Positions 4,841-47,851 of a stretch of DNA of 64,000 nt are shown here, in pieces; positions within the stretch are counted from its first letter, which is position 1; each line of letters begins with the position of its first letter. Made by a program: the position numbers and the translations under genes. A model generated the notes under the pieces. That model did not search any database, was not told the origin of the DNA, and saw nothing but the letters and a program-made list of their open reading frames with translations. Where the stretch lies: positions 279,633-343,632 of IMG/VR virus record IMGVR_UViG_3300017917_003143, one strand, 5' to 3'.

Positions 4841-5680
4841 ATGAACAAATTTGAACAGCTCATTGAATACGTTATCAACGACGAAGAGCAAAAAGCTCGC
4901 GATCTTTTCCACGAGATCGTAGTTGAAAAAAGCCGCGGCATCTATGAAGAATTGATGGCCGAGGAAGAAATTGAAGAAGCCAAAGACGAAGAAGAACTCG
5001 ACGAAGCCAAAGACGAAGAATCTGATGAAGAAGAACTCGATGAAGCCAAGGACGAGGAAGAACTCGACGAAAGCATGATGGGTGAGATGGGCGGCGATCA
5101 AGCCGACGATCTTATTGACGACATTGAAACCGAAGAACAAGGTCTTTCAATGGAAGGCGAAGACGAAATGGCCGACGAAGAAGGCGGCGAAGATCTTGAA
5201 GATCGCGTAGTTGATCTTGAAGACAAACTTGACGAACTCATGGCAGAATTTGAAGCTCTTATGGGCGACGAAGGCCAAGAGGGCGAAGACGAAATGGACA
5301 TTGAAGTTGGTAGCGACGACGTCGAAACCGACGGCATGGGCGCTGGTGAAGAAGAAGAAATGGATTCTGAATTTGAAACCATGGAAGGTACTGAACTTGA
5401 AGAAGCTATCAATTTGAAAGCCGCTCCTGCTCCAGTTAAGTCTGAAGAAGGTAATATCAACAAGAAATCTACTGTTGCAGCCAACAGTGGTGCAAAGGGC
5501 ATGGATGGTAAGCCTGTAATGAGCGCAGACACACCTGAAAAAGGTCGTCCTGCTCCTACAGCCAAAGACTTGATTAGCGATGTGCAAAATGCTCCAGCAA
5601 AGAGCACAGTTAAACAAGGTCCTGCTACCAAGCCACATTTAGCACAGGCTACTGGTGTAAACACCAAGAGCCCTTACTAA
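4841..5680 (+). CDS. Acidic prohead core protein (gp67/gp68-like position)
   Basis: 279 aa, extremely Glu/Asp-rich with EEELDEAKD repeats; between portal and protease; GGAGG SD at 4830-4834. Confidence 0.7.
   Translation: MNKFEQLIEYVINDEEQKARDLFHEIVVEKSRGIYEELMAEEEIEEAKDEEELDEAKDEESDEEELDEAKDEEELDESMMGEMGGDQADDLIDDIETEEQGLSMEGEDEMADEEGGEDLEDRVVDLEDKLDELMAEFEALMGDEGQEGEDEMDIEVGSDDVETDGMGAGEEEEMDSEFETMEGTELEEAINLKAAPAPVKSEEGNINKKSTVAANSGAKGMDGKPVMSADTPEKGRPAPTAKDLISDVQNAPAKSTVKQGPATKPHLAQATGVNTKSPY
4963..5075 (+). repeat. Coding tandem repeat EEELDEAKD
   Basis: Near-identical gaagaactcga(c/t)gaagccaa(a/g)gacga units. Confidence 0.8.
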
Positions 5681-5697: not shown

Positions 5698-6321
5698 ATG
5701 GCTCGTTACCTAAGAGAACACCTTACTTTTGACGCCGCTCGTATTGTACTCGAGGGCGCCGAAGGTAAGGACCTTTATATGAAAGGTATTTGTATCCAGG
5801 GTGGAGTCAAAAACGCCAACGAGCGTGTGTATCCGGTGAGTGAAATTGAAAAAGCTGTTCGTCAAATCAACGAACAGATCCAAGGTGGATACAGTGTTCT
5901 CGGTGAAGTTGATCACCCAGATGACCTTAAGATTAACTTAGATCGTTGCAGTCATATCATGACAGAAATGTGGATGGATGGCCCCAACGGATTTGGTAAG
6001 CTCAAGATTCTCCCAACACCAATGGGTAATTTGGTACGCACCATGCTTGAAAGTGGTGTGAAATTAGGAGTTTCAAGCCGCGGTAGCGGAAACGTTAACG
6101 AGGCCAATGGACATGTCAGTGATTTTGAAATTGTCACTGTCGATGTTGTTGCCCAACCCAGTGCGCCCAACGCATATCCAACAGCCGTATATGAAGGCTT
6201 GATGAACATGAAATATGGTCATCGAGTGTTAGAAATGGCCAAAGATGCTGGAGAGGACAGCAAGGTACAGAGATATTTGAGAGACGAGGTAACTCGCTTG
6301 ATCAAAGATCTCAAGATTTAG
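5698..6321 (+). CDS. gp21: Prohead protease (T4 gp21-like)
   Basis: NANERVYP, LGEVDHP, GKLKILPTPMG, LGVSSRGSG, DVVAQPSAP motifs. Confidence 0.95.
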   Translation: MARYLREHLTFDAARIVLEGAEGKDLYMKGICIQGGVKNANERVYPVSEIEKAVRQINEQIQGGYSVLGEVDHPDDLKINLDRCSHIMTEMWMDGPNGFGKLKILPTPMGNLVRTMLESGVKLGVSSRGSGNVNEANGHVSDFEIVTVDVVAQPSAPNAYPTAVYEGLMNMKYGHRVLEMAKDAGEDSKVQRYLRDEVTRLIKDLKI

Positions 6322-6330
6322 GAGAAACGC

Positions 6331-7419
6331 ATGCTAGATGCCATCAAACCGTTACTAGATAGCGACCTAATCAACGAGGAAACTCGTACAGCGATCTCAG
6401 AACAATGGGAACAAAAGCTGAACGAAGCTCGTGAGGTGGTACGTGCAGAACTCAGAGAAGAGTTTGCACAACGCTATGAGCATGACAAACAAGTGATGGT
6501 GGAAGCCCTAGATCGCATGGTAACAGAAGGTCTCGCCGCAGAGATCCAAGCTGTGCAAGCTGAAAAGCAAGCATTGGCCGAAGATCGCGTCAAGTTCAAT
6601 GTCAAGATGAAGGAATCAGCTACAAAGTTTAACGACTTTATGGTTTCTAAACTTGCAGAAGAAATTGGTGAACTGCGTAAAGATCGCAAAATTCACACAG
6701 AATCAATCCAGAAATTGGAAAGTTTTGTCGTGAAAGCTCTTGCTCAAGAAATCCGTGAATTCGCACAAGACAAGAAGGATGCGGTGGAAACCAAAGTCCG
6801 TTTAGTCCGTGAAGCTCGCAAACAGCTTGAGACATTGAAAGCACGTTTCGTAAAAGAAAGTGCTGACAAGATGAGCAAATCTGTAGCCAAGCATCTCAAG
6901 GCTGAACTTAGTCAACTCCACGAAGACATCAAAGTTGCTCGCGAGAACAATTTTGGTCGTCGTATCTTTGAAGCATACGCCGCTGAATTCGGTGCTACTC
7001 ACCTCAGTGAGAACGCAGAAATCCGTAAGCTCAACAGCGTTATTGCTGCCAAAGATCAGAAGTTGGCTGAAGCCATCAAGATCACCGAGAAGGCTAAAAC
7101 CCTCGTTGAATCAAAAGAACGCGAGATTCGCATAATCCGTGAATCCAATGAGCGAGCAAAGCTCATGGACGAACTGCTTGGACCTCTTAACGAGGAAAAG
7201 GCCGGTGTTATGAAGAATCTGCTAGAAAACGTTCAAACATCCCGTTTAAAGAACGCTTTCGAAAAATATTTGCCAGCTGTGCTCGCAGATAACAAACCAG
7301 CAAAAGCTAAGTCAGTGATTGCTGAGAGTGTTACTGAAGTCACTGGTGATAAATCTGCAAAGGTTGTAGCGGAAGATCGCAGTAATGTGATCGACCTTAA
7401 ACGCCTGGCAGGGCTTTAA
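6331..7419 (+). CDS. gp22: Prohead scaffold protein (T4 gp22-like)
   Basis: 362 aa coiled-coil, E/K-rich, between protease and capsid genes. Confidence 0.85.
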   Translation: MLDAIKPLLDSDLINEETRTAISEQWEQKLNEAREVVRAELREEFAQRYEHDKQVMVEALDRMVTEGLAAEIQAVQAEKQALAEDRVKFNVKMKESATKFNDFMVSKLAEEIGELRKDRKIHTESIQKLESFVVKALAQEIREFAQDKKDAVETKVRLVREARKQLETLKARFVKESADKMSKSVAKHLKAELSQLHEDIKVARENNFGRRIFEAYAAEFGATHLSENAEIRKLNSVIAAKDQKLAEAIKITEKAKTLVESKEREIRIIRESNERAKLMDELLGPLNEEKAGVMKNLLENVQTSRLKNAFEKYLPAVLADNKPAKAKSVIAESVTEVTGDKSAKVVAEDRSNVIDLKRLAGL

Positions 7420-7444: not shown

Positions 7445-8647
7445 ATGTCACAAGAACTACTAGAAAGCCGTTGGGATGAGACCAAAGAAGCCCTACTCGA
7501 AGGCCTACAAGGTGCTCGTCGCTCAACCATGGGTGTTGTTTTAGAAAACACTCGCAAATACTTGAAAGAGAATGCTTCTGCAGGCTCAACAGTTTCAGGT
7601 AATATTGCAACATTAAACCGTGTGATCCTACCAGTGATTCGACGTGTTATGCCAACCGTTATCGCTAACGAGTTGGTTGGCGTTCAGCCAATGACAGGTC
7701 CAGTTGGACAGATCCACACATTACGTGTTCGTTATGCTCAGAGCTTGACAGACAACTCAGCCGCACAAACATCAGTTACAGCTGGTGAAGAAGCGTTGAG
7801 CCCATTCAAGATCGCTCAGGCATATTCGCGTCAAGTATCCGGTGTTGCTGGTGATACAGCTACCGAGTACACAGGTGCTAACACAGCAACTCTTGAAGGC
7901 AATGGTGGTCGTCAGATCTCTGTTCAAATCTTGAAGCAAGCTGTTGAAGCTAAGACACGTAAGCTACAAGCTCGTTGGACATTCGAAGCCGCGCAAGATG
8001 CACAAGCTATGCACGGTATCGATATCGAAGCTGAAATCATGGCAGCTCTTGCACAAGAAATTACTGCTGAAATTGACCAGGAGATTCTCCTGTCACTCCG
8101 CACTCTTGCAAGCACAGAGTTTACATACAACCAAGCTACCGTTTCAGGTACAGCTACATTCGTTGGTGACGAACACGCCGCATTGGCAGTTTTGATCAAC
8201 CGTGTTGCTAACTTGATCGCTCAGCGCACACGTCGTGGCGCTGGTAACTGGGCTGTTGTATCCCCAGCTTCATTGACTGTTCTACAGTCTGCAACAACTT
8301 CTGCTTTTGCACGTACAACAGAAGGCACATTCGAAGCACCTACAAACACCAAGTTTGTTGGTACATTGAACGGTGCTATGCGTGTGTTCTGCGACTCTTA
8401 TGCCGCAGACTCAACACCAGTTCTCGTTGGTTACAAAGGCGCAAGCGAAACTGATGCAGCCGCATTCTACTGCCCATACATCCCATTGATGTCAAGCGGT
8501 GTTGTGCTGGATCCAAGCACATTCGAGCCAGTCGTATCGTTCATGACACGTTACGGCTACATCGAACTCACAAACACAGCATCTTCATTCGGTAACGCCG
8601 GTGACTATGTTGGTGAGATTGCTGTTTCTAACTTGTCATTCTCTTAA
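7445..8647 (+). CDS. gp23: Major capsid protein (T4 gp23-like)
   Basis: LVGVQPMTGPVGQIHTLR, KTRKLQARWTFEAAQD, EITAEIDQEI, FYCPYIPL, FMTRYG motifs; strong SD and downstream terminator. Confidence 0.97.
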   Translation: MSQELLESRWDETKEALLEGLQGARRSTMGVVLENTRKYLKENASAGSTVSGNIATLNRVILPVIRRVMPTVIANELVGVQPMTGPVGQIHTLRVRYAQSLTDNSAAQTSVTAGEEALSPFKIAQAYSRQVSGVAGDTATEYTGANTATLEGNGGRQISVQILKQAVEAKTRKLQARWTFEAAQDAQAMHGIDIEAEIMAALAQEITAEIDQEILLSLRTLASTEFTYNQATVSGTATFVGDEHAALAVLINRVANLIAQRTRRGAGNWAVVSPASLTVLQSATTSAFARTTEGTFEAPTNTKFVGTLNGAMRVFCDSYAADSTPVLVGYKGASETDAAAFYCPYIPLMSSGVVLDPSTFEPVVSFMTRYGYIELTNTASSFGNAGDYVGEIAVSNLSFS

Positions 8648-40285: not shown

Positions 40286-40783
40286 ATGACTAAGAAATTA
40301 GAAGAACTGTTTGATCTACCTCGCAAAGAGGACGCCCAGGGCACAGACGATCCTGAGGATTCACACCCAGGCAACGATGTTGAAACCAATCTTCCAGTAT
40401 TGCCCGAAGCCTTGGCAGCACTGGACAAGATAGAGTCTGCTCTGCCAGCTGTGCGTGGCCTAGAAGCATCTGATCAGGAAATGGATGATCTCGCCAAAAA
40501 AGCCACTGAAAGTTTTGACAACCTCATGGACTTGGGCATGCAAGTAGACAGCCGTTATGCCAGCGAAATCTTTGCAGTGGCAGGTGCCATGTTAGGGCAT
40601 GCGATCACAGCCAAAACAGCCAAACTAAACAAAAAGCTCAAAATGATCGATCTACAGCTCAAAAAAGCCAAGCTCGATCAAGACAACGACGAACCCTCTG
40701 TGTCCACCGGTACCGGTGTGCTGTTGGATCGCAATGAAATACTGGAACGCTTGAGCAAGCGCGAACAACCAAAGAAGCCTTGA
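40286..40783 (+). CDS. Putative terminase small subunit (gp16-like)
   Basis: 165 aa helical protein ending KL..LQ...DRNEILERL; weak resemblance only. Confidence 0.45.
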   Translation: MTKKLEELFDLPRKEDAQGTDDPEDSHPGNDVETNLPVLPEALAALDKIESALPAVRGLEASDQEMDDLAKKATESFDNLMDLGMQVDSRYASEIFAVAGAMLGHAITAKTAKLNKKLKMIDLQLKKAKLDQDNDEPSVSTGTGVLLDRNEILERLSKREQPKKP

Positions 40784-40811: not shown

Positions 40812-41414
40812 ATGAAAACTTTTGCAGAATACTTAACAGAATCCAAGCACACATACGATTATCGTATTAAAATAGCAGGGGATATTCCTCCTGATTTTAT
40901 GAGCGGGTTCAAAGAAAAGCTCAAGCAATTTGACGTGGTGTCAATGAGCGCACCTAAGAAAACACCGGTGCAAAAACAGTTGTCTGATTTTCCTCAGTAC
41001 AACAATGAAAGCATGACTTTCATGGATGTTACTTTTAACTATCCAGCAACACCGCCACAGATCACACAGATCGCTCAGTTATTGGGCCTTGATCCTAACC
41101 GTATCATCATGCAAGATTCTAAGTATGCTGACAGTATTGATCAAGAACGTGCCAAACAAGATGCAGAGAGCAAAAACTTGCTGACTGACACAGATTATCC
41201 AGCTCCTGACAAAGAACAAAAAGCACTATCCAAAGACTACGCAGTCGGCCCCTACGATCATGCTGTGGTCAAGAATGCTTACAAGAGTGATTTCACCGTG
41301 GCAGGAGGCAAGACTCCGCCTGCAGTGAGTTCCAATGATTTCCCAATGGGACAAAAGAGTCCAGTTGGAACAACTAAAAATAAATTGCCAGCTGTACACA
41401 GCAACGCCAGATAA
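40812..41414 (+). CDS. Putative internal head protein
   Basis: Starts MKTFAEYLTE, like the T4 capsid-targeting sequence MKTYQEFIAE. Confidence 0.55.
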   Translation: MKTFAEYLTESKHTYDYRIKIAGDIPPDFMSGFKEKLKQFDVVSMSAPKKTPVQKQLSDFPQYNNESMTFMDVTFNYPATPPQITQIAQLLGLDPNRIIMQDSKYADSIDQERAKQDAESKNLLTDTDYPAPDKEQKALSKDYAVGPYDHAVVKNAYKSDFTVAGGKTPPAVSSNDFPMGQKSPVGTTKNKLPAVHSNAR

Positions 41415-41425
41415 GGAAAAAACAA

Positions 41426-43066
41426 ATGAATAACATGTATGACATACTCGGTAAAATGAATTTGCTGGAAGGCAAAGGTAGCAAACCTGACTTCCTTGAT
41501 CTGGACAAAGATGGCAACAAAAAAGAACCAATGAAGTCAGCGGCCAAGGAAGTTGATGAAGCATCATATTCTGCCAAAGCCGCTCGTGCTGGCAAAGACA
41601 TTGGCAAGCCAGGCAAAGCATTTGCACAGATAGCTGCCAAAGCTGGCAAGGCCTATGGTAGCAAAGAGCGTGGCGAGAAAGTTGCTGGTGCTGTGTTGGC
41701 CAAACTCCGTGCCAAAGAAGATGTGGCACAAGAAGGCAACAAGTTCACAGGCAATCTAGCCAAGGCTCGTGCCGCAGGCAAAAAAGTAGCAGACCTTGAT
41801 GGTGACGGAGACATGGAGCCAGTGCGCGAAGGTAATCTTGAAGAACTTGACATGAAGTTGCTCAAAGGACTACAAGGTGCAATGAGCAAGAATCAAAAGG
41901 ATCCAGAGAGCGAGCGCAACATCCACAAGAAATATGGATACCGCAGTGATCGTGACGAGACATCAGACGACGACTATGATGAGCACGGCAATCTCAAAGA
42001 CAAGAAAAAAGCCAAGCACAAAGATGATGGTCCTAAGAAAAAAGGACGCCCCAAAGGTTCAGGCCGTAAACTTGGAGCCAAAGGTCCTACAGGCAAGAGC
42101 AAATTGCTCCGTATGAAAGAAGACGAAACACAGTTGGTAGACAAAGGCGAATACGATCGCGAAGGCGACATGGCCAAAGAGCAGTTGCACACTATCGAAG
42201 CCGCTGCCAAAGAATTACACAGTATCCTTGGCGATGATCAGAACTTGCCAGAATGGGTGCAATCAAAGATTACCAAGGCCATGGACTACATTGACACAGC
42301 ACGTGACTATATGTTGAGCCAAAGGCACGATCAAGAAGAAATGCCTGTGGCTGAAAAGGCTGTGAGCAAAGCACAACAACGTTTCATGGGCATGGCACAT
42401 GCCATGCAAAAGGGCGAAAAGATTCCTGGCGCCAGCAAGGAATTAAAGCAAGTAGCCAAGACCATGAAGAAGGGTGACGTAGAAGATTTTGCTAAAACCA
42501 AACACTCAGGTCTTCCTGAAAAGAAAAAGAAGGAAGAAGAAGTCGAAGAAACCACAGTGGCTGGTAGCGTAGCACCTGCACCTGCTGGCGGAAAAGGAAA
42601 AAAAGGTATGGTATTTGGCAAGGGAGTATATGAAAACAAGATCGCTGAGAGCTTTGACAAGAAATTAGGCGAAGTGCTCAACGAAGGCATGAGCATCAAT
42701 ATGAGCATGGGCGAAGACGGACAGAAAAGCCTTACAGTCAACGCCACAGATGACGATGCTGTAAAACTTGCGCAGATTCTCAAATTGGCTGGCATGGGTT
42801 CAAGCCATGGTTACCAAGACGCATGCCCTGCATGTGGACAGCAAGATTGTGGTTGTGAACAGATGGACGAAGCACAAGATGATTTGGCCAATTCTCCTGA
42901 TGAAGAAACAGAAACAACAGAATACATGACCAAAACGATCGCCGGCGGCTTGAACAAGAACAAGGTAACAGGAATGACTACAATACCTGTGGTGCCTACC
43001 CAGCAAGTCACTGAAGCTGAGATTGAAAAAGATCTCATGAATCTTTACAAACAGTTTAAAGCATAA
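41426..43066 (+). CDS. K/E-rich putative internal head (poly)protein
   Basis: 546 aa low-complexity modules separated by hydrophobic-X-E sites. Confidence 0.5.
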   Translation: MNNMYDILGKMNLLEGKGSKPDFLDLDKDGNKKEPMKSAAKEVDEASYSAKAARAGKDIGKPGKAFAQIAAKAGKAYGSKERGEKVAGAVLAKLRAKEDVAQEGNKFTGNLAKARAAGKKVADLDGDGDMEPVREGNLEELDMKLLKGLQGAMSKNQKDPESERNIHKKYGYRSDRDETSDDDYDEHGNLKDKKKAKHKDDGPKKKGRPKGSGRKLGAKGPTGKSKLLRMKEDETQLVDKGEYDREGDMAKEQLHTIEAAAKELHSILGDDQNLPEWVQSKITKAMDYIDTARDYMLSQRHDQEEMPVAEKAVSKAQQRFMGMAHAMQKGEKIPGASKELKQVAKTMKKGDVEDFAKTKHSGLPEKKKKEEEVEETTVAGSVAPAPAGGKGKKGMVFGKGVYENKIAESFDKKLGEVLNEGMSINMSMGEDGQKSLTVNATDDDAVKLAQILKLAGMGSSHGYQDACPACGQQDCGCEQMDEAQDDLANSPDEETETTEYMTKTIAGGLNKNKVTGMTTIPVVPTQQVTEAEIEKDLMNLYKQFKA

Positions 43067-43740
43067 TGAAAACACTGCGCGAATACATCACTGAATCAGA
43101 ACAATGGATGGATAACCCAGCCGTTGGTGATGACTTTGCGATCAACATCAAAGAAGATTGTTTGATTGAAAGCCATATCATCGCAGTAGAAGAAGATAGA
43201 CTCTGCATCGAAGCTGATGAAAAATTGATGGCCATATTAGAAAGTTATGGATATCAATTAGAAGACAAGTGTTCTGTCTGCGGGCACGAAGCCTGCACCT
43301 GCGAAGATCTTGATGAAATGATGAGCGTGGACGATGTGTTGGTCAGTGAAGATCCCACAGAAGAAGAGCCAATGACTCCTGGTCGTGATGATCCAGATGG
43401 TACTACAGCCGATGATCCAATCGGCGAAGATTCTGGCGAAGAAGATGGCATGCCATTGGATATCGACGAAGCTGAATATCAAGGTCGCAAAGTGCCCTTG
43501 GGTAAGCCCATGCGTGGTGATGTCAAGAAGTTCAAAGTTTATGTGCGTGATCCCAGCACTGGCAATGTAAAAAAAGTCAACTTTGGCCACGGTGGTACAT
43601 CGGCTAAACGTCTTGGTCAGAAGACCATGAAGATCAAAAAATCAAATCCTGCACGTCGTAGATCATTCCGTGCTCGCCACAACTGCGACAATCCAGGACC
43701 AAGAACCAAAGCAAGATATTGGTCTTGCCGTGCGTGGTAA
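43066..43740 (+). CDS. Putative internal head protein with basic C-terminal domain
   Basis: Starts MKTLREYITE; acidic middle; basic KKFKVYV...VKKVNFG...RARHNCD...KARYWSC end. Confidence 0.55.
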   Translation: MKTLREYITESEQWMDNPAVGDDFAINIKEDCLIESHIIAVEEDRLCIEADEKLMAILESYGYQLEDKCSVCGHEACTCEDLDEMMSVDDVLVSEDPTEEEPMTPGRDDPDGTTADDPIGEDSGEEDGMPLDIDEAEYQGRKVPLGKPMRGDVKKFKVYVRDPSTGNVKKVNFGHGGTSAKRLGQKTMKIKKSNPARRRSFRARHNCDNPGPRTKARYWSCRAW

Positions 43741-43755
43741 ACAAGGAAAATAAAA

Positions 43756-44034
43756 ATGGCCGCAAACGTATACACATCATTGGCTAATGCCACAGTCTAT
43801 ACAGATAAACTACAGATAATTACTACTTCAAACGCTGTAACATACCAGGTTTATGCTACAGCACTGGGCTCTGCTCCAGCAGTTGGTAATATTTACAGCG
43901 AACCTATTAACATTCCAGCCCATACCGTGTTTGAAGTATATGCCGGTGCCGGTAACAAAGTTACTGTGGCTGGTTCTAATTGGACAGCACTTGAATTAGG
44001 GACAGCGAGTTCAGCACAAGAAAGCGTGTTCTAA
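43756..44034 (+). CDS. Hypothetical protein (92 aa)
   Basis: SD AAGGA; beta-rich composition. Confidence 0.7.
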   Translation: MAANVYTSLANATVYTDKLQIITTSNAVTYQVYATALGSAPAVGNIYSEPINIPAHTVFEVYAGAGNKVTVAGSNWTALELGTASSAQESVF

Positions 44035-44035
44035 A

Positions 44036-44449
44036 ATGAGAGCACGAGAGTTTGTCACAGAAGACGCTGGATTCAACGGGTTTGATCACGACGAGTCTAC
44101 CGGTCGTCGACGTCCTACTAAAAAACACCAAAAAGGTCATCCTGACAATTGGTACGTAGCTACCAGTCCGGGTGCCATGCGTATTGACAACCTTGACAAG
44201 TATTATGATCTATATCGTATGAGTATGATCATGGCTGGCGGCCCCACAGATGACGTAGCTGATGAAGAATCTTACATAGCCAACAGTCCTGTGTTGAGTG
44301 GGTATACTGATGAGGATGATGAAAAAATTAAGTACGCTGCCAAACGCATGGGCGGAGTGATCAGAGATATTGCACCACCTGGCAGCCGCGAACCTCAAGA
44401 TACACAGAAACAGAGTCCAATCAAAGCATTCAAAGGTTACCCAAAATGA
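44036..44449 (+). CDS. Putative internal head protein, paralog 1
   Basis: MRAREFVTE...SPIKAFKGYPK. Confidence 0.6.
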   Translation: MRAREFVTEDAGFNGFDHDESTGRRRPTKKHQKGHPDNWYVATSPGAMRIDNLDKYYDLYRMSMIMAGGPTDDVADEESYIANSPVLSGYTDEDDEKIKYAAKRMGGVIRDIAPPGSREPQDTQKQSPIKAFKGYPK

Positions 44450-44832
44450 GAGCACGTGAGTTTATCACCGAACAAGAAAATCTTGCACCTGAGCAAGCCG
44501 CTCCCATGCGACAAACTTATGTGATTCCTGGACTCAGCGCCGCGGATCCTTACAAAAATTATAGATTTGGTGTGGCCATAGCACGAGCCAGATCTGATCA
44601 AACACCCGATGACATCAACCCACACCGACCCGAGTGGTCAAAAGAAACACCATTTGGTGAGCATGGTGTGGTAGTGGGCATGAATGCAGGAATCAAACCT
44701 GTGATTGATGCCGCACTGAAGATGACAGGTACCCCAGGTGGCAAACGAATAGTATCAACTCCAGCCAGCGACGAGCCAGAGTTCGTGGAAAAAATCAGTC
44801 CAATCAAACCCTTTAAAGGATATCCACGGTAA
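44446..44832 (+). CDS. Putative internal head protein, paralog 2
   Basis: MRAREFITE...SPIKPFKGYPR. Confidence 0.6.
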   Translation: MRAREFITEQENLAPEQAAPMRQTYVIPGLSAADPYKNYRFGVAIARARSDQTPDDINPHRPEWSKETPFGEHGVVVGMNAGIKPVIDAALKMTGTPGGKRIVSTPASDEPEFVEKISPIKPFKGYPR

Positions 44833-46439
44833 TGGCCACGCCAAATCCCTCAGAAGTAGCACCATGGTATCTGCGTAACATAACGCAGGCCCTGGAACTG
44901 GACGAAGCCACAGGCAATGTATTTGTCCGTACCAATGCGGCCATACTTGGCAATGTATCAGTGGGTAATGTATCTATTGGCGCATTAGGCAACATTGACC
45001 TAACAGGTAACACCATGCCGGTGTCTGTTATAGGCGATGTCACAGTTCTACAAGGCACCAATCCTTGGGTAGTCACTGGCAACACAAATGTAGCTATCAC
45101 ATCGGGCAATGTAGGCATCACAGGCAATGTCAACGTCACACAAGGTACAACACCTTGGACAGTGTCCGGCAATGTGGGGATCTCAGGCACAGCCAATGTT
45201 GTGTTGGCCGAAGATGCCAATGTAGTCATCTCAGGATTCAGCGGTGCTGTGTCAGATGCGTTTGGCCGACTGCGTGTGAGCGAACCTTACACCCTGTTTG
45301 ACACACAGGCTCGTTATTTTGATCATCAACAGTTTGCCAGCAACGTCACAGGCACTGGCAACGTTGTTTACGTACAAAATCAAAGCTCGTATCAACTCAA
45401 TGTGGGTTCAGCATCAGGCGACAGCGTACTAAGAGAAACCTTAAAAGCATTTCCTTATCAACCAGGCAAGAGTCAACTTACATTAAACACATTCTGTTTT
45501 AACACACCCAAGACCAATCTGCGCCAGCGTGTGGGATTGTTTGATGCTGACAACGGTGTGTTCTTTGAAAACGATGGAGAATACAACTACTTTGTGATCA
45601 GATCAGGCTCCACAGGAGTAGAAGAGCGTGTGCGTCAAGACGCCTGGAACGGCAATCAACTGCTTGGAGTAGTCAACACCAATAATCCCTCAGGTATAAA
45701 TCTATATCCTGATCGTACCCAGATCATGTTTGCTGACGTAGAGTGGTTGGGTGTGGGTTCGGTGCGTGTAGGATTTGTGATCAACGGTGCTTATGTCATC
45801 TGTCACACATTTAATCATGCTAACCAACCAGGCAATACAAAAGTCTACATGACCACGGCTACCTTGCCCATACGCTATGAGATAACCAACACTGGTGCTA
45901 CTACTGGTGCCAGCATGATGACACAGATATGTAGCTCGGTGATTTCTGAAGGGGGATTCCAGTTAGCAGGATCAGGTAATCCTCGTGCGGCCTCGCATGT
46001 TATAGGTACTCCGGTTCGATTGCCCAACGATCAGAGTTTTAAACCAGTGCTGTCAATCAGATTAAAGAGCACCAACTTAGATGCCGTGGTCATTCCTATC
46101 AACTATTCTTTGGTTCCTGTTGCACAGAGTTTATTCCAATACCGAATCTATAAAAAAGCTGTCACATCAGGCGGCTCATGGGTCAGTTCAGCCGCAGACA
46201 GTTCAGTGGAATACAATCTTGCACCTACCGCATTGGTATCTGGAGATATAGCGGAACAAACTTTTCTAAACTCCAGTAACCAAAGTAGTCAAGCACCTAC
46301 ACAGACATCATTTACATTCGTATATCAATTGGAGCGAGAGCCATTTACAGGCGTAGCATATGAATATGTGATCATGGCTGCCACCACAGGTACTAATCAA
46401 GACGTTTACGCCAGCATTGAATGGCAGGAGATTACATAA
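44832..46439 (+). CDS. Probable virion structural protein
   Basis: 535 aa; GNV repeats at N-terminus, DAFGRLRVSEPYTLFD motif, beta-sandwich-like composition. Confidence 0.6.
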   Translation: MATPNPSEVAPWYLRNITQALELDEATGNVFVRTNAAILGNVSVGNVSIGALGNIDLTGNTMPVSVIGDVTVLQGTNPWVVTGNTNVAITSGNVGITGNVNVTQGTTPWTVSGNVGISGTANVVLAEDANVVISGFSGAVSDAFGRLRVSEPYTLFDTQARYFDHQQFASNVTGTGNVVYVQNQSSYQLNVGSASGDSVLRETLKAFPYQPGKSQLTLNTFCFNTPKTNLRQRVGLFDADNGVFFENDGEYNYFVIRSGSTGVEERVRQDAWNGNQLLGVVNTNNPSGINLYPDRTQIMFADVEWLGVGSVRVGFVINGAYVICHTFNHANQPGNTKVYMTTATLPIRYEITNTGATTGASMMTQICSSVISEGGFQLAGSGNPRAASHVIGTPVRLPNDQSFKPVLSIRLKSTNLDAVVIPINYSLVPVAQSLFQYRIYKKAVTSGGSWVSSAADSSVEYNLAPTALVSGDIAEQTFLNSSNQSSQAPTQTSFTFVYQLEREPFTGVAYEYVIMAATTGTNQDVYASIEWQEIT

Positions 46440-47143
46440 TGAAAAAACTATTAGCCATTCTACTATTTGTACCCGTGGCAGTATGGGCACAAATCAATCA
46501 ACAATGTCCACAGTTTACCAGTCACGGCACACCTGCTTATCAAGCACAGCCAGGTGATCAAGAACTGTGTAAAACAAACTATGCTGTCATCCATCGTTGT
46601 TCAGTCAAAGCACCTGTGGCAGTGTTTGAACATTTGACAGTGGCCGCAATGACAGGTCCTGCCAAACGTAAAGACAACTTCCGACCAGATCCTGCTGTAC
46701 ATCCAGAATGTCAAGCTACCTTGGCCGACTATGCCACAGTGGGCCGCACACACGATCGCGGACACATGGCTCCGGCGGCTAACAACACACAAAATGATCA
46801 GATCATGAGCGAAAGCTTCTTCTTATCAAACATGGTAGCACAAGTGGCCAACAACAATCGTGGTATCTGGAAACAGTTGGAAACTTGGGAACGTGACTGG
46901 GCCATGAAAGGCGGAGACTTCTACATCATCTCCGGTGGTATCTTTGATCAAGGTCATCCAGTGACAGGCAATGGATTGGGCATACCCACACGCCTTTACA
47001 AAGTCATACACGAAAAAGCATCAGGACAGACCATGGCATATCTCATGCCCAATGCTCCACTACCTGTTGCAGATTTACCTAAGTATCAAGTTCCACTGGA
47101 AGCAGTAGAACAAGCCACAGGCTTCCGTTTTCCTTTTAGATGA
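46439..47143 (+). CDS. Non-specific DNA/RNA endonuclease (NucA/Serratia family) with signal peptide
   Basis: Start ATG 46439 (TAATG coupling); MKKLLAILLFVPVAVWA signal; DRGHMAP, ESFFLSNM.AQ...NRGIWKQLE. Confidence 0.9.
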   Translation: MKKLLAILLFVPVAVWAQINQQCPQFTSHGTPAYQAQPGDQELCKTNYAVIHRCSVKAPVAVFEHLTVAAMTGPAKRKDNFRPDPAVHPECQATLADYATVGRTHDRGHMAPAANNTQNDQIMSESFFLSNMVAQVANNNRGIWKQLETWERDWAMKGGDFYIISGGIFDQGHPVTGNGLGIPTRLYKVIHEKASGQTMAYLMPNAPLPVADLPKYQVPLEAVEQATGFRFPFR

Positions 47144-47343
47144 CCGCAGAAGAACTACAGAGACTCGCTGGTATAGGAGTTTATCGACCATATAACCTGC
47201 CTCCAACGGCAGGTTCTAACATCAGCATCACTGGCAATGAAAAAGGCGAGCTGATGAAAAAACACAACATCCAGCCAGGCACACCTGAGTGGTTCCAGTT
47301 ATGGTTCAGTAAGCCTTACTTGACTGGTGAGCATCCTCTTTGA
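47140..47343 (+). CDS. Small hypothetical protein (67 aa)
   Basis: ATGA-coupled; ELQRLAGI motif. Confidence 0.65.
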   Translation: MTAEELQRLAGIGVYRPYNLPPTAGSNISITGNEKGELMKKHNIQPGTPEWFQLWFSKPYLTGEHPL

Positions 47344-47851
47344 GACCCAAGTAAAGATTCCAGCTGGGGTGCCGTACACCGCGATAGGTGCTTTTCACAG
47401 AGTTGACCAAGGCCCAGTAGTTAGGCTTTACAGGAGCTTTGTTTGGCCTCCAGATCTTGTTGCCTTTTTCTGAGTTACACTCTTTACAGGCAGTGACACA
47501 GTTTTCCCACGTAGTGGTTCCGCCTTGTGCTCGAGGTAGCACATGATCGATGGTGAGTTCACGGCCGTTGAATGTTTCGTCGCAGTATTGGCAAGTGAAT
47601 AGATCTCGTAGATAAAGATTCTGCCTGCTGAATCGCATGCCGCCATTTTTGCCAAAACCTCGCTTGGTCACGGCCACAGCAGGGACTCGCATCTCCAGCT
47701 TGGCGCTTCGTACGACCCAATCATCATACCATTCTAACACTTGGATTTTGTCCAAGAAGAATAGTTTAACCGCTGTTTGCCAATCAATTGTGCTGAGTGG
47801 CAAGTAATTGACCGGTTGGTAGTCCGGTGCTAATATAAGGGTATCACTCAT
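47306..47851 (-). CDS. HNH endonuclease (McrA-like)
   Basis: RDLFTCQYC...LTIDHVLPRAQGG...WENCVTACKECNSEKG. Confidence 0.92.
   Translation of the reverse strand: MSDTLILAPDYQPVNYLPLSTIDWQTAVKLFFLDKIQVLEWYDDWVVRSAKLEMRVPAVAVTKRGFGKNGGMRFSRQNLYLRDLFTCQYCDETFNGRELTIDHVLPRAQGGTTTWENCVTACKECNSEKGNKIWRPNKAPVKPNYWALVNSVKSTYRGVRHPSWNLYLGLKEDAHQSSKAY

What the first reader, a model, noticed from the sequence alone, without database searches (positions are those of the whole stretch)
40812..44832. Cluster of proteins with T4-like capsid-targeting N-termini
Seen: MKTFAEYLTE (40812), MKTLREYITE (43066), MRAREFVTE (44036) and MRAREFITE (44446). Knowledge: T4 internal proteins IPII/IPIII start MKTYQEFIAE, which directs packaging into the prohead and is removed by gp21 after Glu; IPs are injected, and IPI inhibits a restriction enzyme. 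Inference: these are uncharacterised packaged and possibly ejected proteins, so candidate anti-defence or DNA-organising factors.
Basis: partly seen in the sequence, partly recalled or inferred. Interest (0 to 1): 0.7.

Follow-up and report, generated by a model that had tools for sequence, protein, structure and literature searches.

The report
Capsid-targeting tags in a jumbo phage
Four neighbouring genes of an uncultivated 344-kb pond phage begin with a 9-10-residue peptide very like the tag that phage T4 uses to load proteins into its head. The same tag sits on many unrelated proteins in related phages, so it probably marks proteins that are packed into the virion, but nobody has yet looked in a virion.

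Summary
The four ORFs start MKTFAEYLTE, MKTLREYITE, MRAREFVTE and MRAREFITE. A six-frame scan of the 343,632-bp genome finds seven such motifs, all at ORF starts, against about 0.005 expected.

The genome is a T4-related jumbo phage from a pond metagenome. It encodes a gp21-type prohead protease. Its capsid protein aligns YLKE|N with T4's known FLTE|A maturation site.

The tag is a separable module:
- It is selected as a peptide, because synonymous codons vary freely.
- In viral contigs it heads at least 30 unrelated protein families, including HAD phosphatase, GNAT, DnaJ, SLT and GH19 enzymes.
- The same cargo domain occurs with either tag type, or with no tag.

One tagged protein (40812) has a PA5oct homologue recorded as a virion protein by mass spectrometry. 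Cyanomyoviruses carry similar tags at the same genome position.

Best reading (confidence about 0.65): these are T4-type capsid-targeting propeptides, cut after Glu, in two forms. One is a T4-like 10-mer and the other a new 9-mer, MRAxEF[IV]xE.

No data show packaging, cleavage or ejection. The suggested anti-defence or DNA-organising roles are untested, and for the widely conserved 40812 family an anti-defence role is unlikely.

It is a new variant of a known kind.

The parts
40812..41414 (+). 200-aa protein with a 10-residue K-type tag, MKTFAEYLTE|S. A ferredoxin-like domain follows (about residues 15-105) and the C-terminal half is disordered.
   Evidence: ORF. The family has 551 clusters at 50% identity, and nearly all full-length members keep ..Y[LI]xE[SA]. 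PA5oct gp202, annotated 'structural protein, ESI-MS/MS', is homologous from residue 1 (E 4e-12). In the AF2 model the tag is a low-confidence N-terminal helix.
40812..40841 (+). K-type tag (10 codons). The inferred cleavage is after Glu10.
   Evidence: It matches T4's MKTYQEFIAE at the four functional positions: 4 and 7 (targeting), 8 and 10 (processing).
41426..43066 (+). 546-aa charged protein (DUF3008) between the two K-type genes. It carries no tag but is part of the conserved block.
   Evidence: It shows no sequence similarity to PA5oct gp203, which holds the same position.
43066..43740 (+). 224-aa protein made of a K-type tag MKTLREYITE|S, an acidic Cys-rich middle part, and a C-terminal phrog_7595 domain (residues 133-224).
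   Evidence: The C-domain occurs without this N-terminal part in pelagiphage and roseophage podoviruses. In Kyanoviridae phage C48C1 it follows the N-terminus MKKFKQYIDE. The gene is present in relative G001 and absent in G002 and G003.
43756..44034 (+). 92-aa protein, untagged, conserved in all relatives between the tagged genes.
   Evidence: It has only a weak Ig-like hit below the Pfam cut-off.
44036..44449 (+). 137-aa protein with a 9-residue R-type tag, MRAREFVTE|D. It is a paralogue of 44446.
44446..44832 (+). 128-aa protein with the R-type tag MRAREFITE|Q. It belongs to a large unnamed family with a conserved C-terminal ..SxE..SPxKxFKGYPR.
   Evidence: 3,658 clusters at 90% identity, with no Pfam hit and no name. 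Alignment A1. The AF2 model has pLDDT 82.6 overall and 55 over the tag. No fold match was found.
44832..46439 (+). 535-aa virion structural protein (phrog_1645). Its start overlaps the end of 44446, so the two are translationally coupled.
   Evidence: phrog_1645, E 3e-105. It is about 46% identical to cyanomyovirus proteins, some annotated 'virion structural protein' and others hypothetical.
40286..40783 (+). 165-aa protein upstream of the cluster, possibly the small terminase subunit.
   Evidence: phrog_16202, and a weak phrog_445 hit. Its position is conserved in PA5oct, Phosso and G001-G003.
5698..6321 (+). gp21-type prohead protease (Peptidase_S77), the inferred enzyme that removes the tags.
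   Evidence: PF03420, 94 bits. phrog_207, E 6e-56.
7445..8647 (+). Major capsid protein. The inferred maturation cleavage is after Glu42 (..RKYLKE|NASAGS).
   Evidence: phrog_138. The site aligns with T4 gp23's FLTE|AEIGGD site.
4841..5680 (+). 279-aa very acidic protein of the prohead-core gene block. It starts MNKFEQLIE, compared with T4 gp22 MLKEQLIAE.
6331..7419 (+). 362-aa coiled-coil protein between the protease and the capsid gene. It holds the position of the T4 gp22 scaffold and is the inferred docking partner of the tags.
   Evidence: phrog_10922. The scaffold role rests on position and composition only.

Best explanation
The four N-termini are capsid-targeting propeptides of the T4 type.

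Inferred mechanism. Each protein is made late from the structural operon. Its first 9-10 residues dock it onto the scaffolding core of the assembling prohead. After the shell closes, the gp21-type protease (window 5698-6321) cuts after the terminal Glu ([FY][ILV]xE|). This is the same kind of site at which it trims the major capsid protein (YLKE|N). The mature protein stays inside the head with the DNA and may leave with it at infection.

There are two tag forms:
- A 10-mer, M-K-[TS]-[FL]-x-[EDQ]-Y-[LI]-[TA]-E. It is collinear with T4's MKTYQEFIAE.
- A 9-mer, M-R-A-x-E-F-[IVL]-x-E. It is one residue shorter, lacks T4's position-4 aromatic, and has not been described.

Shown here: the motif, its restriction to N-termini, selection at the peptide level, its modularity, the protease gene, the matching capsid site, the operon context, and virion detection of one distant homologue.

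Inferred only: docking to the core, cleavage, retention in the head, and ejection.

Likely roles. 40812 is a conserved head-assembly or internal structural protein. 44036 and 44446 are internal proteins, perhaps abundant ones, of unknown activity. 43066 is a variable accessory cargo.
For: 1. Seven motif hits in the genome, all at ORF starts, against about 0.005 expected. Apart from the 44036/44446 pair, the proteins are unrelated beyond the tag.
2. T4 IPII and IPIII start MKTYQEFIAE. In T4, residues 4 and 7 target, residues 8 and 10 direct processing, and gp21 cuts after L/I-X-E (PMC9026906). The K-type tags match all four positions.
3. An S77 protease is present in the window. It is also present in 5 of 5 tag-bearing IMG/VR records that are at least 54% complete.
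4. The capsid protein's site YLKE|N aligns with T4's FLTE|A. Relatives have QLME|S and MLRE|S.
5. Back-translated tags find more than 120 and 118 places in IMG/VR, against about 1 expected by my own estimate. All are ORF starts. They fall into 17 and 19 BLAST families.
6. Synonymous sites vary as in the genome at large, except codon 2. Upstream DNA is not conserved.
7. Tagged cargo includes HAD phosphatase, DnaJ, DUF6267, GNAT, SLT and LysM+GH19 proteins.
8. The same HAD cargo carries a K-type tag in L172 and MRASEF in this genome. Homology (E 1e-43) begins after the tags.
9. The domain that follows the tag in the gene at 143162 starts at residue 3 of an untagged cyanophage protein.
10. PA5oct gp202, a homologue of 40812 from residue 1, is annotated as a virion protein by ESI-MS/MS.
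11. The gene block is conserved inside the sheath-to-terminase operon in relatives G001-G003.
12. In AF2 models the tags are low-confidence N-terminal extensions outside the fold.
13. Cyanomyoviruses have MKSYNEFISE and MKSFKQFISE proteins at the equivalent position.
Against: - There are no virion proteome, N-terminal sequencing or expression data for this phage or any phage carrying the R-type tag. No isolate holds the 44036/44446 family.
- The R-type tag lacks the aromatic at T4 position 4, which matters for targeting in T4.
- The PA5oct and Phosso homologues of 40812 (MKSFRDYYDAS, MKNFYEYLSSV) lack the P1 Glu, yet the PA5oct protein is in virions. In that family the N-terminus need not be cleaved and may be part of the mature protein.
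- The closest isolates (PA5oct, GAP32, CBB, Vibrio phage 2.275.O) have the protease but essentially no multi-copy tag.
- Several genes of the second cluster carry only the half motif MRAxE[FL] with no [ILV]xE.
- T4 gp61.1, a 54-aa hypothetical protein, also starts MKTFKEFIKE. A CTS-like N-terminus therefore does not by itself prove packaging.
- The co-occurrence of tag and protease is not phylogenetically independent, because it comes from one lineage.
Confidence: 0.65

Rival explanations
1. The conserved N-terminal peptide is a recognition signal for something other than the prohead. Candidates are a phage chaperone or assembly factor, a regulated cytoplasmic protease, a degradation or stability signal, or a signal to another compartment. 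Its likeness to the T4 tag would then be convergent or inherited with a changed role.
For: - The tag sits on enzymes that could act in the cytoplasm, such as DnaJ, GNAT, HAD and DUF6267 proteins.
- A second cluster of tagged genes lies among non-structural genes.
- Half-tags without a cleavage site exist.
- T4 gp61.1 has a CTS-like start but is only a hypothetical protein.
- The R-type tag lacks T4's position-4 aromatic.
Against: - The tag ends in the same [FY][LI]xE form as the capsid protein's maturation site.
- All tag-bearing records that are near complete encode the S77 protease.
- The window genes lie inside the structural operon, beside a virion structural gene.
- One homologue is recorded in virions.
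- Packaged enzymes are normal in T4 (Alt), as the literature states.
- The peptide is hydrophilic, so it is not a secretion signal.
Confidence: 0.17
2. For the 40812 family specifically, the N-terminus is an integral, uncleaved part of a conserved structural protein of the head or neck. It only resembles a targeting tag.
For: - The family holds a fixed position across PA5oct, Atu_ph07, Phosso and G001-G003.
- The conserved sequence runs straight on from the tag into SKKxYxFKIKxAG.
- The PA5oct and Phosso versions lack the P1 Glu, yet the PA5oct protein is in virions.
Against: - In 150 diverse representatives the Y[LI]xE[SA] element, with its Glu, is almost universal.
- The same decapeptide heads 18 other unrelated families.
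- The AF2 model places it outside the folded domain at low confidence.
Confidence: 0.2
3. The shared sequence is a DNA-level feature: a patch of homology for cassette shuffling, or a translation-initiation element. The peptide would be a by-product.
For: - Codon 2 is AGA in 78% of R-type tags, against 18% of Arg codons in the genome. This points to some nucleotide-level or initiation-level selection at that codon.
- Tagged genes often lie in tandem with overlapping stop and start codons.
- In T-even phages, conserved regulatory cassettes flanking genes are reported to mediate modular gene shuffling (paper titles and abstracts listed).
Against: - Codons 3-9 use synonymous codons at about genome frequencies while the amino acids stay fixed.
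- The upstream DNA is not conserved.
- The motif is never found on the opposite strand or in the reversed-pattern control.
Confidence: 0.04
4. The N-termini are similar by chance or through recent paralogy.
For: 44036 and 44446 are paralogues.
Against: - Seven hits were found against about 0.005 expected.
- The other proteins are unrelated beyond the tag.
- Hundreds of ORF-start occurrences on more than 30 families were found in IMG/VR.
Confidence: 0.01

Closest known systems
[quoted passage not shown]
   Same: - A 10-residue N-terminal peptide, M-K-T-aromatic-x-E-aromatic-[IL]-x-E.
- It is shared by otherwise unrelated proteins of one phage.
- It ends in an L/I-X-E site for a gp21-type protease that the same genome encodes.
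- The genes are small and variable between relatives.
   Different: - The host phage is a roughly 344-kb jumbo phage, distant from T4. Its capsid protein is only 67% identical to that of the nearest isolate.
- Position 7 is Tyr rather than Phe.
- A second form, the 9-mer MRAxEF[IV]xE, lacks T4's position-4 aromatic.
- The mature parts have no similarity to T4 IPs and are not strongly basic.
- Packaging and cleavage have not been shown.
T4 Alt, a packaged and ejected ADP-ribosyltransferase with propeptides removed by gp21
   Same: It is the precedent for an enzyme loaded into the head as a processed internal protein. Tagged relatives here include GNAT, HAD, DnaJ, SLT and GH19 proteins.
   Different: None of the four window proteins has a recognisable enzyme domain. 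The tagged enzymes are in related metagenomic contigs and in the second cluster of this genome.
Long N-terminal propeptides of the inner-body and ejection proteins of phiKZ, 201phi2-1 and SPN3US
   Same: They are proteins of jumbo-phage heads cut after Glu by a gp21-related protease, and their propeptides are thought to target the prohead.
   Different: Those propeptides are 20 to over 100 residues long, with S/A/G-X-E sites and no shared decapeptide. The tags here are 9-10 residues with [ILV]-x-E, the T4 style.
Pseudomonas phage PA5oct gp202 (EST35_0202), a virion protein by ESI-MS/MS
   Same: It is homologous to 40812 from residue 1 (31% identity over 102 residues, E 4e-12). It has the same length and the same position after the gp4-like and small-terminase-like genes.
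   Different: Its N-terminus is MKSFRDYYDAS, with no Glu at position 10. PA5oct has no multi-copy tag.

Membership tests
T4-type CTS-bearing internal head proteins | An N-terminal peptide of about 10 residues with hydrophobic or aromatic residues at positions 4 and 7 (targeting), and L/I at position 8 with Glu at position 10 (processing) | tested here: met
   The K-type tags MKTFAEYLTE and MKTLREYITE have F/L4, Y7, L/I8 and E10. The R-type tags MRAREF[VI]TE keep the equivalents of F7, I/V8 and E10, but are one residue shorter and have no position-4 aromatic. For those two proteins the feature is only partly met.
T4-type CTS-bearing internal head proteins | The same genome encodes a gp21-type (Peptidase_S77) prohead protease | tested here: met
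   PF03420, 94 bits, at window 5698-6321. phrog_207.
T4-type CTS-bearing internal head proteins | The tag ends in the protease's cleavage motif, the same motif used at the capsid protein's maturation site | tested here: met
   The capsid site YLKE|N aligns with T4 gp23 FLTE|A. The tags end YLTE|, YITE|, FVTE| and FITE|. This rests on alignment, not on cleavage data.
T4-type CTS-bearing internal head proteins | The tag is modular: shared by proteins otherwise unrelated, and separable from the cargo | tested here: met
T4-type CTS-bearing internal head proteins | The protein is physically present in proheads and virions | not testable with these tools
   The only indirect evidence is that the PA5oct homologue of 40812 is annotated ESI-MS/MS. 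No isolate carries the 44036/44446 family. The paper's supplements are not held.
T4-type CTS-bearing internal head proteins | The N-terminal propeptide is removed during head maturation | not testable with these tools
   This needs virion mass spectrometry or N-terminal sequencing. The structure-based docking attempt gave no verdict.
T4-type CTS-bearing internal head proteins | The protein is ejected into the host with the DNA | not testable with these tools
   No data.
T4 IPII/IPIII-like DNA-associated basic proteins | Small, strongly basic mature protein | tested here: not met
   The mature pI values are 7.8 (40812), 4.7 (43066), 5.9 (44036) and 8.2 (44446). Two tagged proteins of the second cluster are basic, with pI 10.5 and 10.7.
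T4 IPI/IPII/IPIII by sequence homology | Similarity of the mature part to a T4 internal protein | tested here: not met
   hhalign aligns only the tag. T4's own IPs are also unrelated to each other beyond the CTS, so this feature does not define the functional class.

The most novel reading that the evidence does not exclude
The 9-10-residue tag may be a general loading signal for the phage head, used across the T4 superfamily well beyond the T-even phages. That would include a large clade of uncultivated freshwater jumbo phages and cyanomyoviruses. If so, the packaged and possibly injected protein arsenal of an uncultivated phage could be read directly from its genome. That arsenal would include enzymes such as GNAT acetyltransferases, HAD phosphatases, J-domain proteins and cell-wall hydrolases, plus an unnamed family of about 3,700 sequence clusters. 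The undescribed 9-mer MRAxEF[IV]xE would be a second, lineage-specific form of the signal.
Probability: 0.5. Interest if true: 0.75.

Novelty: new variant of a known kind. Interest (0 to 1): 0.6.

Why it matters
Proteins packed in phage heads and injected with the DNA are the first phage proteins to act in the cell. They include known anti-restriction and host-takeover factors. They are normally found only by virion proteomics of cultured phages.

If this tag works as in T4, a simple sequence rule would flag such proteins in uncultivated jumbo phages and cyanophages. It would point to thousands of unstudied candidates, including enzymes, and would assign a likely location to a very large unnamed protein family.

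It would also show that the T4 targeting and processing system is ancient and conserved across the T4 superfamily. A shorter natural tag could be tried for loading foreign proteins into phage heads.

Tried and rejected
- **Nearby isolates.** Megablast of the region against isolated phages found no match. tblastn of 44036 and 44446 against isolated phages found no match even at E 0.1-1. No cultured phage with proteome data carries that family.
- **Domain searches.** Pfam and PHROGs found nothing for 44036 or 44446. 40812 gave only a weak phrog_14802 hit.
- **Fold searches.** The 44446 model found no fold in the PDB and only one uncharacterised phage protein in BFVD. The 40812 model gave a generic ferredoxin-like match at Z about 7, which is background level.
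- **Homology to T4 internal proteins.** Profile comparison of both families with T4 IPIII and IPII aligned only the tag.
- **Protease-tag complex.** Complex prediction of the protease with residues 1-40 of 44446 gave no verdict and is not evidence either way.
- **Late promoter.** The T4 late-promoter box TATAAATA is not enriched in this genome and not found upstream of the cluster. Late expression rests on operon position only.
- **Looser motif.** A relaxed genome scan returned mostly internal, non-start matches and added no convincing members.
- **PA5oct peptide data.** The supplementary tables are not held.
- **Positional homologue.** 41426 and PA5oct gp203 show no sequence similarity.
- **Scaffold-end motif.** The scaffold-like protein's C-terminal ..LKRLAGL recurs in 41426, but the count is at chance level (2 found, about 3 expected).
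- **Second-cluster neighbours.** A Pfam scan was uninformative.
- **Sequencing runs.** Only DNA runs from a pond metagenome hold the region, so there is no RNA evidence.
- **Literature.** A search for the peptide strings found no paper describing them.

Full report
**What is there**

- 40812-41414 (200 aa, MKTFAEYLTE)
- 43066-43740 (224 aa, MKTLREYITE)
- 44036-44449 (137 aa, MRAREFVTE)
- 44446-44832 (128 aa, MRAREFITE)

All are on the + strand, tightly packed or overlapping their neighbours. Each starts at the first ATG, 2-38 codons after an in-frame stop.

The window is the last 64 kb of a 343,632-bp IMG/VR virus record. GC content is 45%, and CheckV rates the record 99% complete. The only sequencing run that holds the region is a pond metagenome, DNA only.

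**More than chance**

A six-frame scan of the whole genome for M[KR]x2-4E[FYW][ILVM]xE returns seven hits. All are on the coding strand at ORF starts. Four are in the window and three lie at 133,260, 137,907 and 143,162. From amino-acid composition, about 0.005 such N-termini are expected.

With the first 12 residues removed, only 44036 and 44446 are related (E 1.5e-8). The shared N-terminus is therefore not explained by paralogy.

The region 132-144 kb holds further genes that start with the half motif MRAxE[FL]. One is a HAD-phosphatase-like protein, MRASEFSNSKLVIFDIDDTL.

**What kind of phage**

The window carries a T4-type head module: portal, a small core protein, an acidic 279-aa protein, a Peptidase_S77 (gp21-type) protease, a coiled-coil scaffold-like protein and a gp23-type capsid protein.

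The closest isolates by capsid protein are only 67% identical: Vibrio phage 2.275.O, Sinorhizobium phage Phosso and Pseudomonas phage PA5oct. The RaK2/GAP32 group comes next at 64%. This is an uncultivated lineage of the T4-related jumbo phages.

The finding lies inside a co-directional operon with this gene order: tail sheath, tube, tube-like protein, 119-aa protein, gp4-like head completion protein, 165-aa small-terminase-like protein, 40812, 41426, 43066, 43756, 44036, 44446, phrog_1645 virion structural protein, secreted nuclease, an HNH gene on the other strand, then the large terminase.

The same block is present in three related IMG/VR genomes. The 43066 homologue and the phrog_1645 gene are present or absent depending on the genome.

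**Comparison with T4, checked rather than recalled**

In record NC_000866, IPII and IPIII start MKTYQEFIAE and IPI starts MKTFKEF...ITE|A. According to the review PMC9026906:
- The first ten residues of IPIII suffice for loading into the head.
- Residues 4 and 7 matter for targeting. Residues 8 and 10 matter for processing.
- gp21 cuts after L/I-X-E.

The two K-type tags of the window match all four positions (F/L4, Y7, L/I8, E10). The two R-type tags keep the E-F-[IV]-x-E half, but are one residue shorter and lack the position-4 aromatic.

T4 gp23 is cut at ...SFLTE|AEIGGD. The window's capsid protein aligns ...RKYLKE|NASAGS there. Relatives have QLME|S and MLRE|S. The tags therefore end in the same form as the capsid protein's inferred maturation site.

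**The tag is a separable, peptide-level module**

*Breadth.*
My own information-content estimate is about one chance match.
- All 128 matches are ORF starts. They fall into 17 BLAST families once the tag is removed. One family of 93 members contains 44036 and 44446.
- The MKTxxEY[IL]TE scan gave 118 matches, again all ORF starts, in 19 families. Of these, 88 belong to the 40812 family.
- In the 2.09 Mb of fetched loci, a relaxed pattern marks 389 ORFs with 127 tag variants. In 364 of them the tag starts at the first Met of the open frame.

*Peptide-level selection.* Codons 3-9 use synonymous codons at about genome frequencies. Only codon 2 is biased: AGA in 78% of tags against 18% of Arg codons in the genome. 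Upstream DNA is not conserved.

*Cargo.* Tagged proteins with recognisable domains include HAD phosphatase, DnaJ, DUF6267, two GNAT acetyltransferases, an SLT transglycosylase, a LysM+GH19 hydrolase and DUF6934.

*Two direct cases of modularity.*
- The HAD protein carries MKTFSEYLTE in contig L172 and MRASEF in this genome. The homology (36% identity, E 1e-43) begins after the tags.
- The motif WSEKYKRSINCANPKGFSQRAHCQGR follows the tag in the gene at 143,162. In cyanophage S-SRM01 gp206, which has no tag, it starts at residue 3.

*Structure models.* AF2 places both tags as low-confidence N-terminal extensions outside the fold.

**Link to virions**

40812 has homologues from residue 1, in the same gene order, in PA5oct, Atu_ph07 and Phosso. 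The PA5oct protein (EST35_0202) is annotated 'structural protein, ESI-MS/MS' and aligns at E 4e-12.

Among 150 diverse representatives of this family (551 clusters at E <= 0.001), 88 carry the strict tag. Most of the others still have ..Y[LI]xE[SA].

S77 protease genes are present in all five tag-bearing IMG/VR records that are at least 54% complete. They are present in two of five records that are 24-39% complete fragments. This co-occurrence comes from one lineage, so it is weak evidence.

**Beyond this lineage**

Cyanomyoviruses carry small proteins starting MKSYNEFISE (S-RIM8) and MKSFKQFISE (S-SRM01). These sit directly upstream of the phrog_1645 structural gene, between the small and large terminase genes. 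S-SRM01 has three more such starts.

A Kyanoviridae homologue of the 43066 C-terminal domain starts MKKFKQYIDE. All 135 records holding the cyanophage protein label it hypothetical.

The literature held here describes CTS-like sequences only in T-even phages, and speculates that T4-like phages use them more widely. No paper contains these peptide strings.

By contrast, PA5oct, GAP32, CBB and Vibrio phage 2.275.O have essentially no multi-copy tag.

**What the proteins are**

- *44036/44446 family.* It is very large (3,658 clusters at 90% identity), unnamed and without a Pfam hit. It has a conserved PYxxYRFGVA core, an invariant SxE and a C-terminal SPxKxFKGYPR. The model is confident (pLDDT 82.6) but matches no known fold.
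- *40812.* It has a generic ferredoxin-like domain and a disordered C-terminal half.
- *43066.* It joins the tag to an acidic, Cys-rich segment and a phrog_7595 domain. That domain occurs untagged in pelagiphage and roseophage podoviruses.
- *Charge.* Mature pI values are 4.7-8.2, so these are not IPII/IPIII-like basic proteins.

**Conclusion**

The most likely explanation (about 0.65) is that these are T4-type capsid-targeting propeptides removed by the gp21-type protease. They come in a T4-like 10-mer form and a new 9-mer form.

Docking to the core, cleavage, retention and ejection are inferred, not shown. The main caveats are:
- There are no proteomic data for any phage with the R-type tag.
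- The PA5oct and Phosso homologues of 40812 lack the P1 Glu.
- Half-tags exist without a cleavage site.
- T4 gp61.1 has a CTS-like start but no known place in the virion.

The fixed, widely conserved 40812 family looks like an assembly or structural component. 43066 is variable and is the best accessory, effector-like candidate of the four.

Noticed in passing
Outside the window: genome G000 132,298-143,757 (locus L294): A second cluster of genes starts MRAxE[FL]. Three have full tags: MRATEFVAE, MRAHEFIVE and MRAQEFVSE. Several have half tags: MRASEFSNS (a HAD phosphatase), MRAQELTGH, MRAWELGEV and MRAQDFIPT. They lie among accessory genes of unknown function.
   Followed up: partly
window 46421-47143 (+) and 47306-47851 (-): A DNA/RNA non-specific endonuclease (Endonuclease_NS, 132 bits) with a signal-peptide-like N-terminus lies inside the structural operon. 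A homologue occurs in G001 and G002. An HNH endonuclease gene sits on the opposite strand just upstream of the large terminase gene.
   Followed up: partly
T4 record NC_000866, 18966-19130 (-): T4 gp61.1, a 54-aa hypothetical protein next to the primase gene, starts MKTFKEFIKE. This fits the CTS pattern fully. I found no record of it as a virion protein.
   Followed up: no
L279:2539-2865 (S-RIM8) and L280:2560-2868 (S-SRM01): Cyanomyoviruses encode 102-108-aa proteins starting MKS[YF]xxFISE directly upstream of the phrog_1645 virion structural gene. The family is in 135 phage records, all labelled hypothetical. The genes between the small and large terminase genes resemble those in the window.
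   Followed up: partly
L004:5001-5756 (Atu_ph07, AUZ94910.1): The annotated start of the Atu_ph07 homologue of 40812 looks 29 codons too short. The upstream ATG gives MKTLQDYLTESKKCYTYHVKF, which matches the family N-terminus.
   Followed up: no
window 44036-44832 and many IMG/VR loci (for example L018, L094, L106, L119): Members of the 44446 family often lie in tandem. The upstream gene ends ..FKGYP[RK] and its stop overlaps the next ATG (ATGA). The family also has an invariant SxE about 20 residues from the C-terminus, which could be a second processing site.
   Followed up: no
Codon 2 of R-type tags (window 44039-44041 and 44449-44451, and IMG/VR loci): The Arg at position 2 is encoded by AGA in 78% of 117 distinct tags, against 18% of Arg codons genome-wide. 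All other tag codons follow genome usage. This may be a translation-initiation effect.
   Followed up: partly
window 6331-7419 (C-terminus) and 41426-43066 (residues 451-457): The scaffold-like protein ends ..DLKRLAGL. 41426 contains ..ILKLAGMG. PA5oct gp203 starts ..DILRLAGV, and the scaffold-position proteins of GAP32 and the Vibrio phage end ..KLSGM and ..KIAGI. Within this genome the pattern count is at chance level, so this is only a hint.
   Followed up: partly
window 4841-5680: A 279-aa extremely acidic protein between the portal and protease genes starts MNKFEQLIE. This resembles the start of T4 gp22 (MLKEQLIAE). It is probably a prohead-core protein with its own L-I-E site.
   Followed up: no
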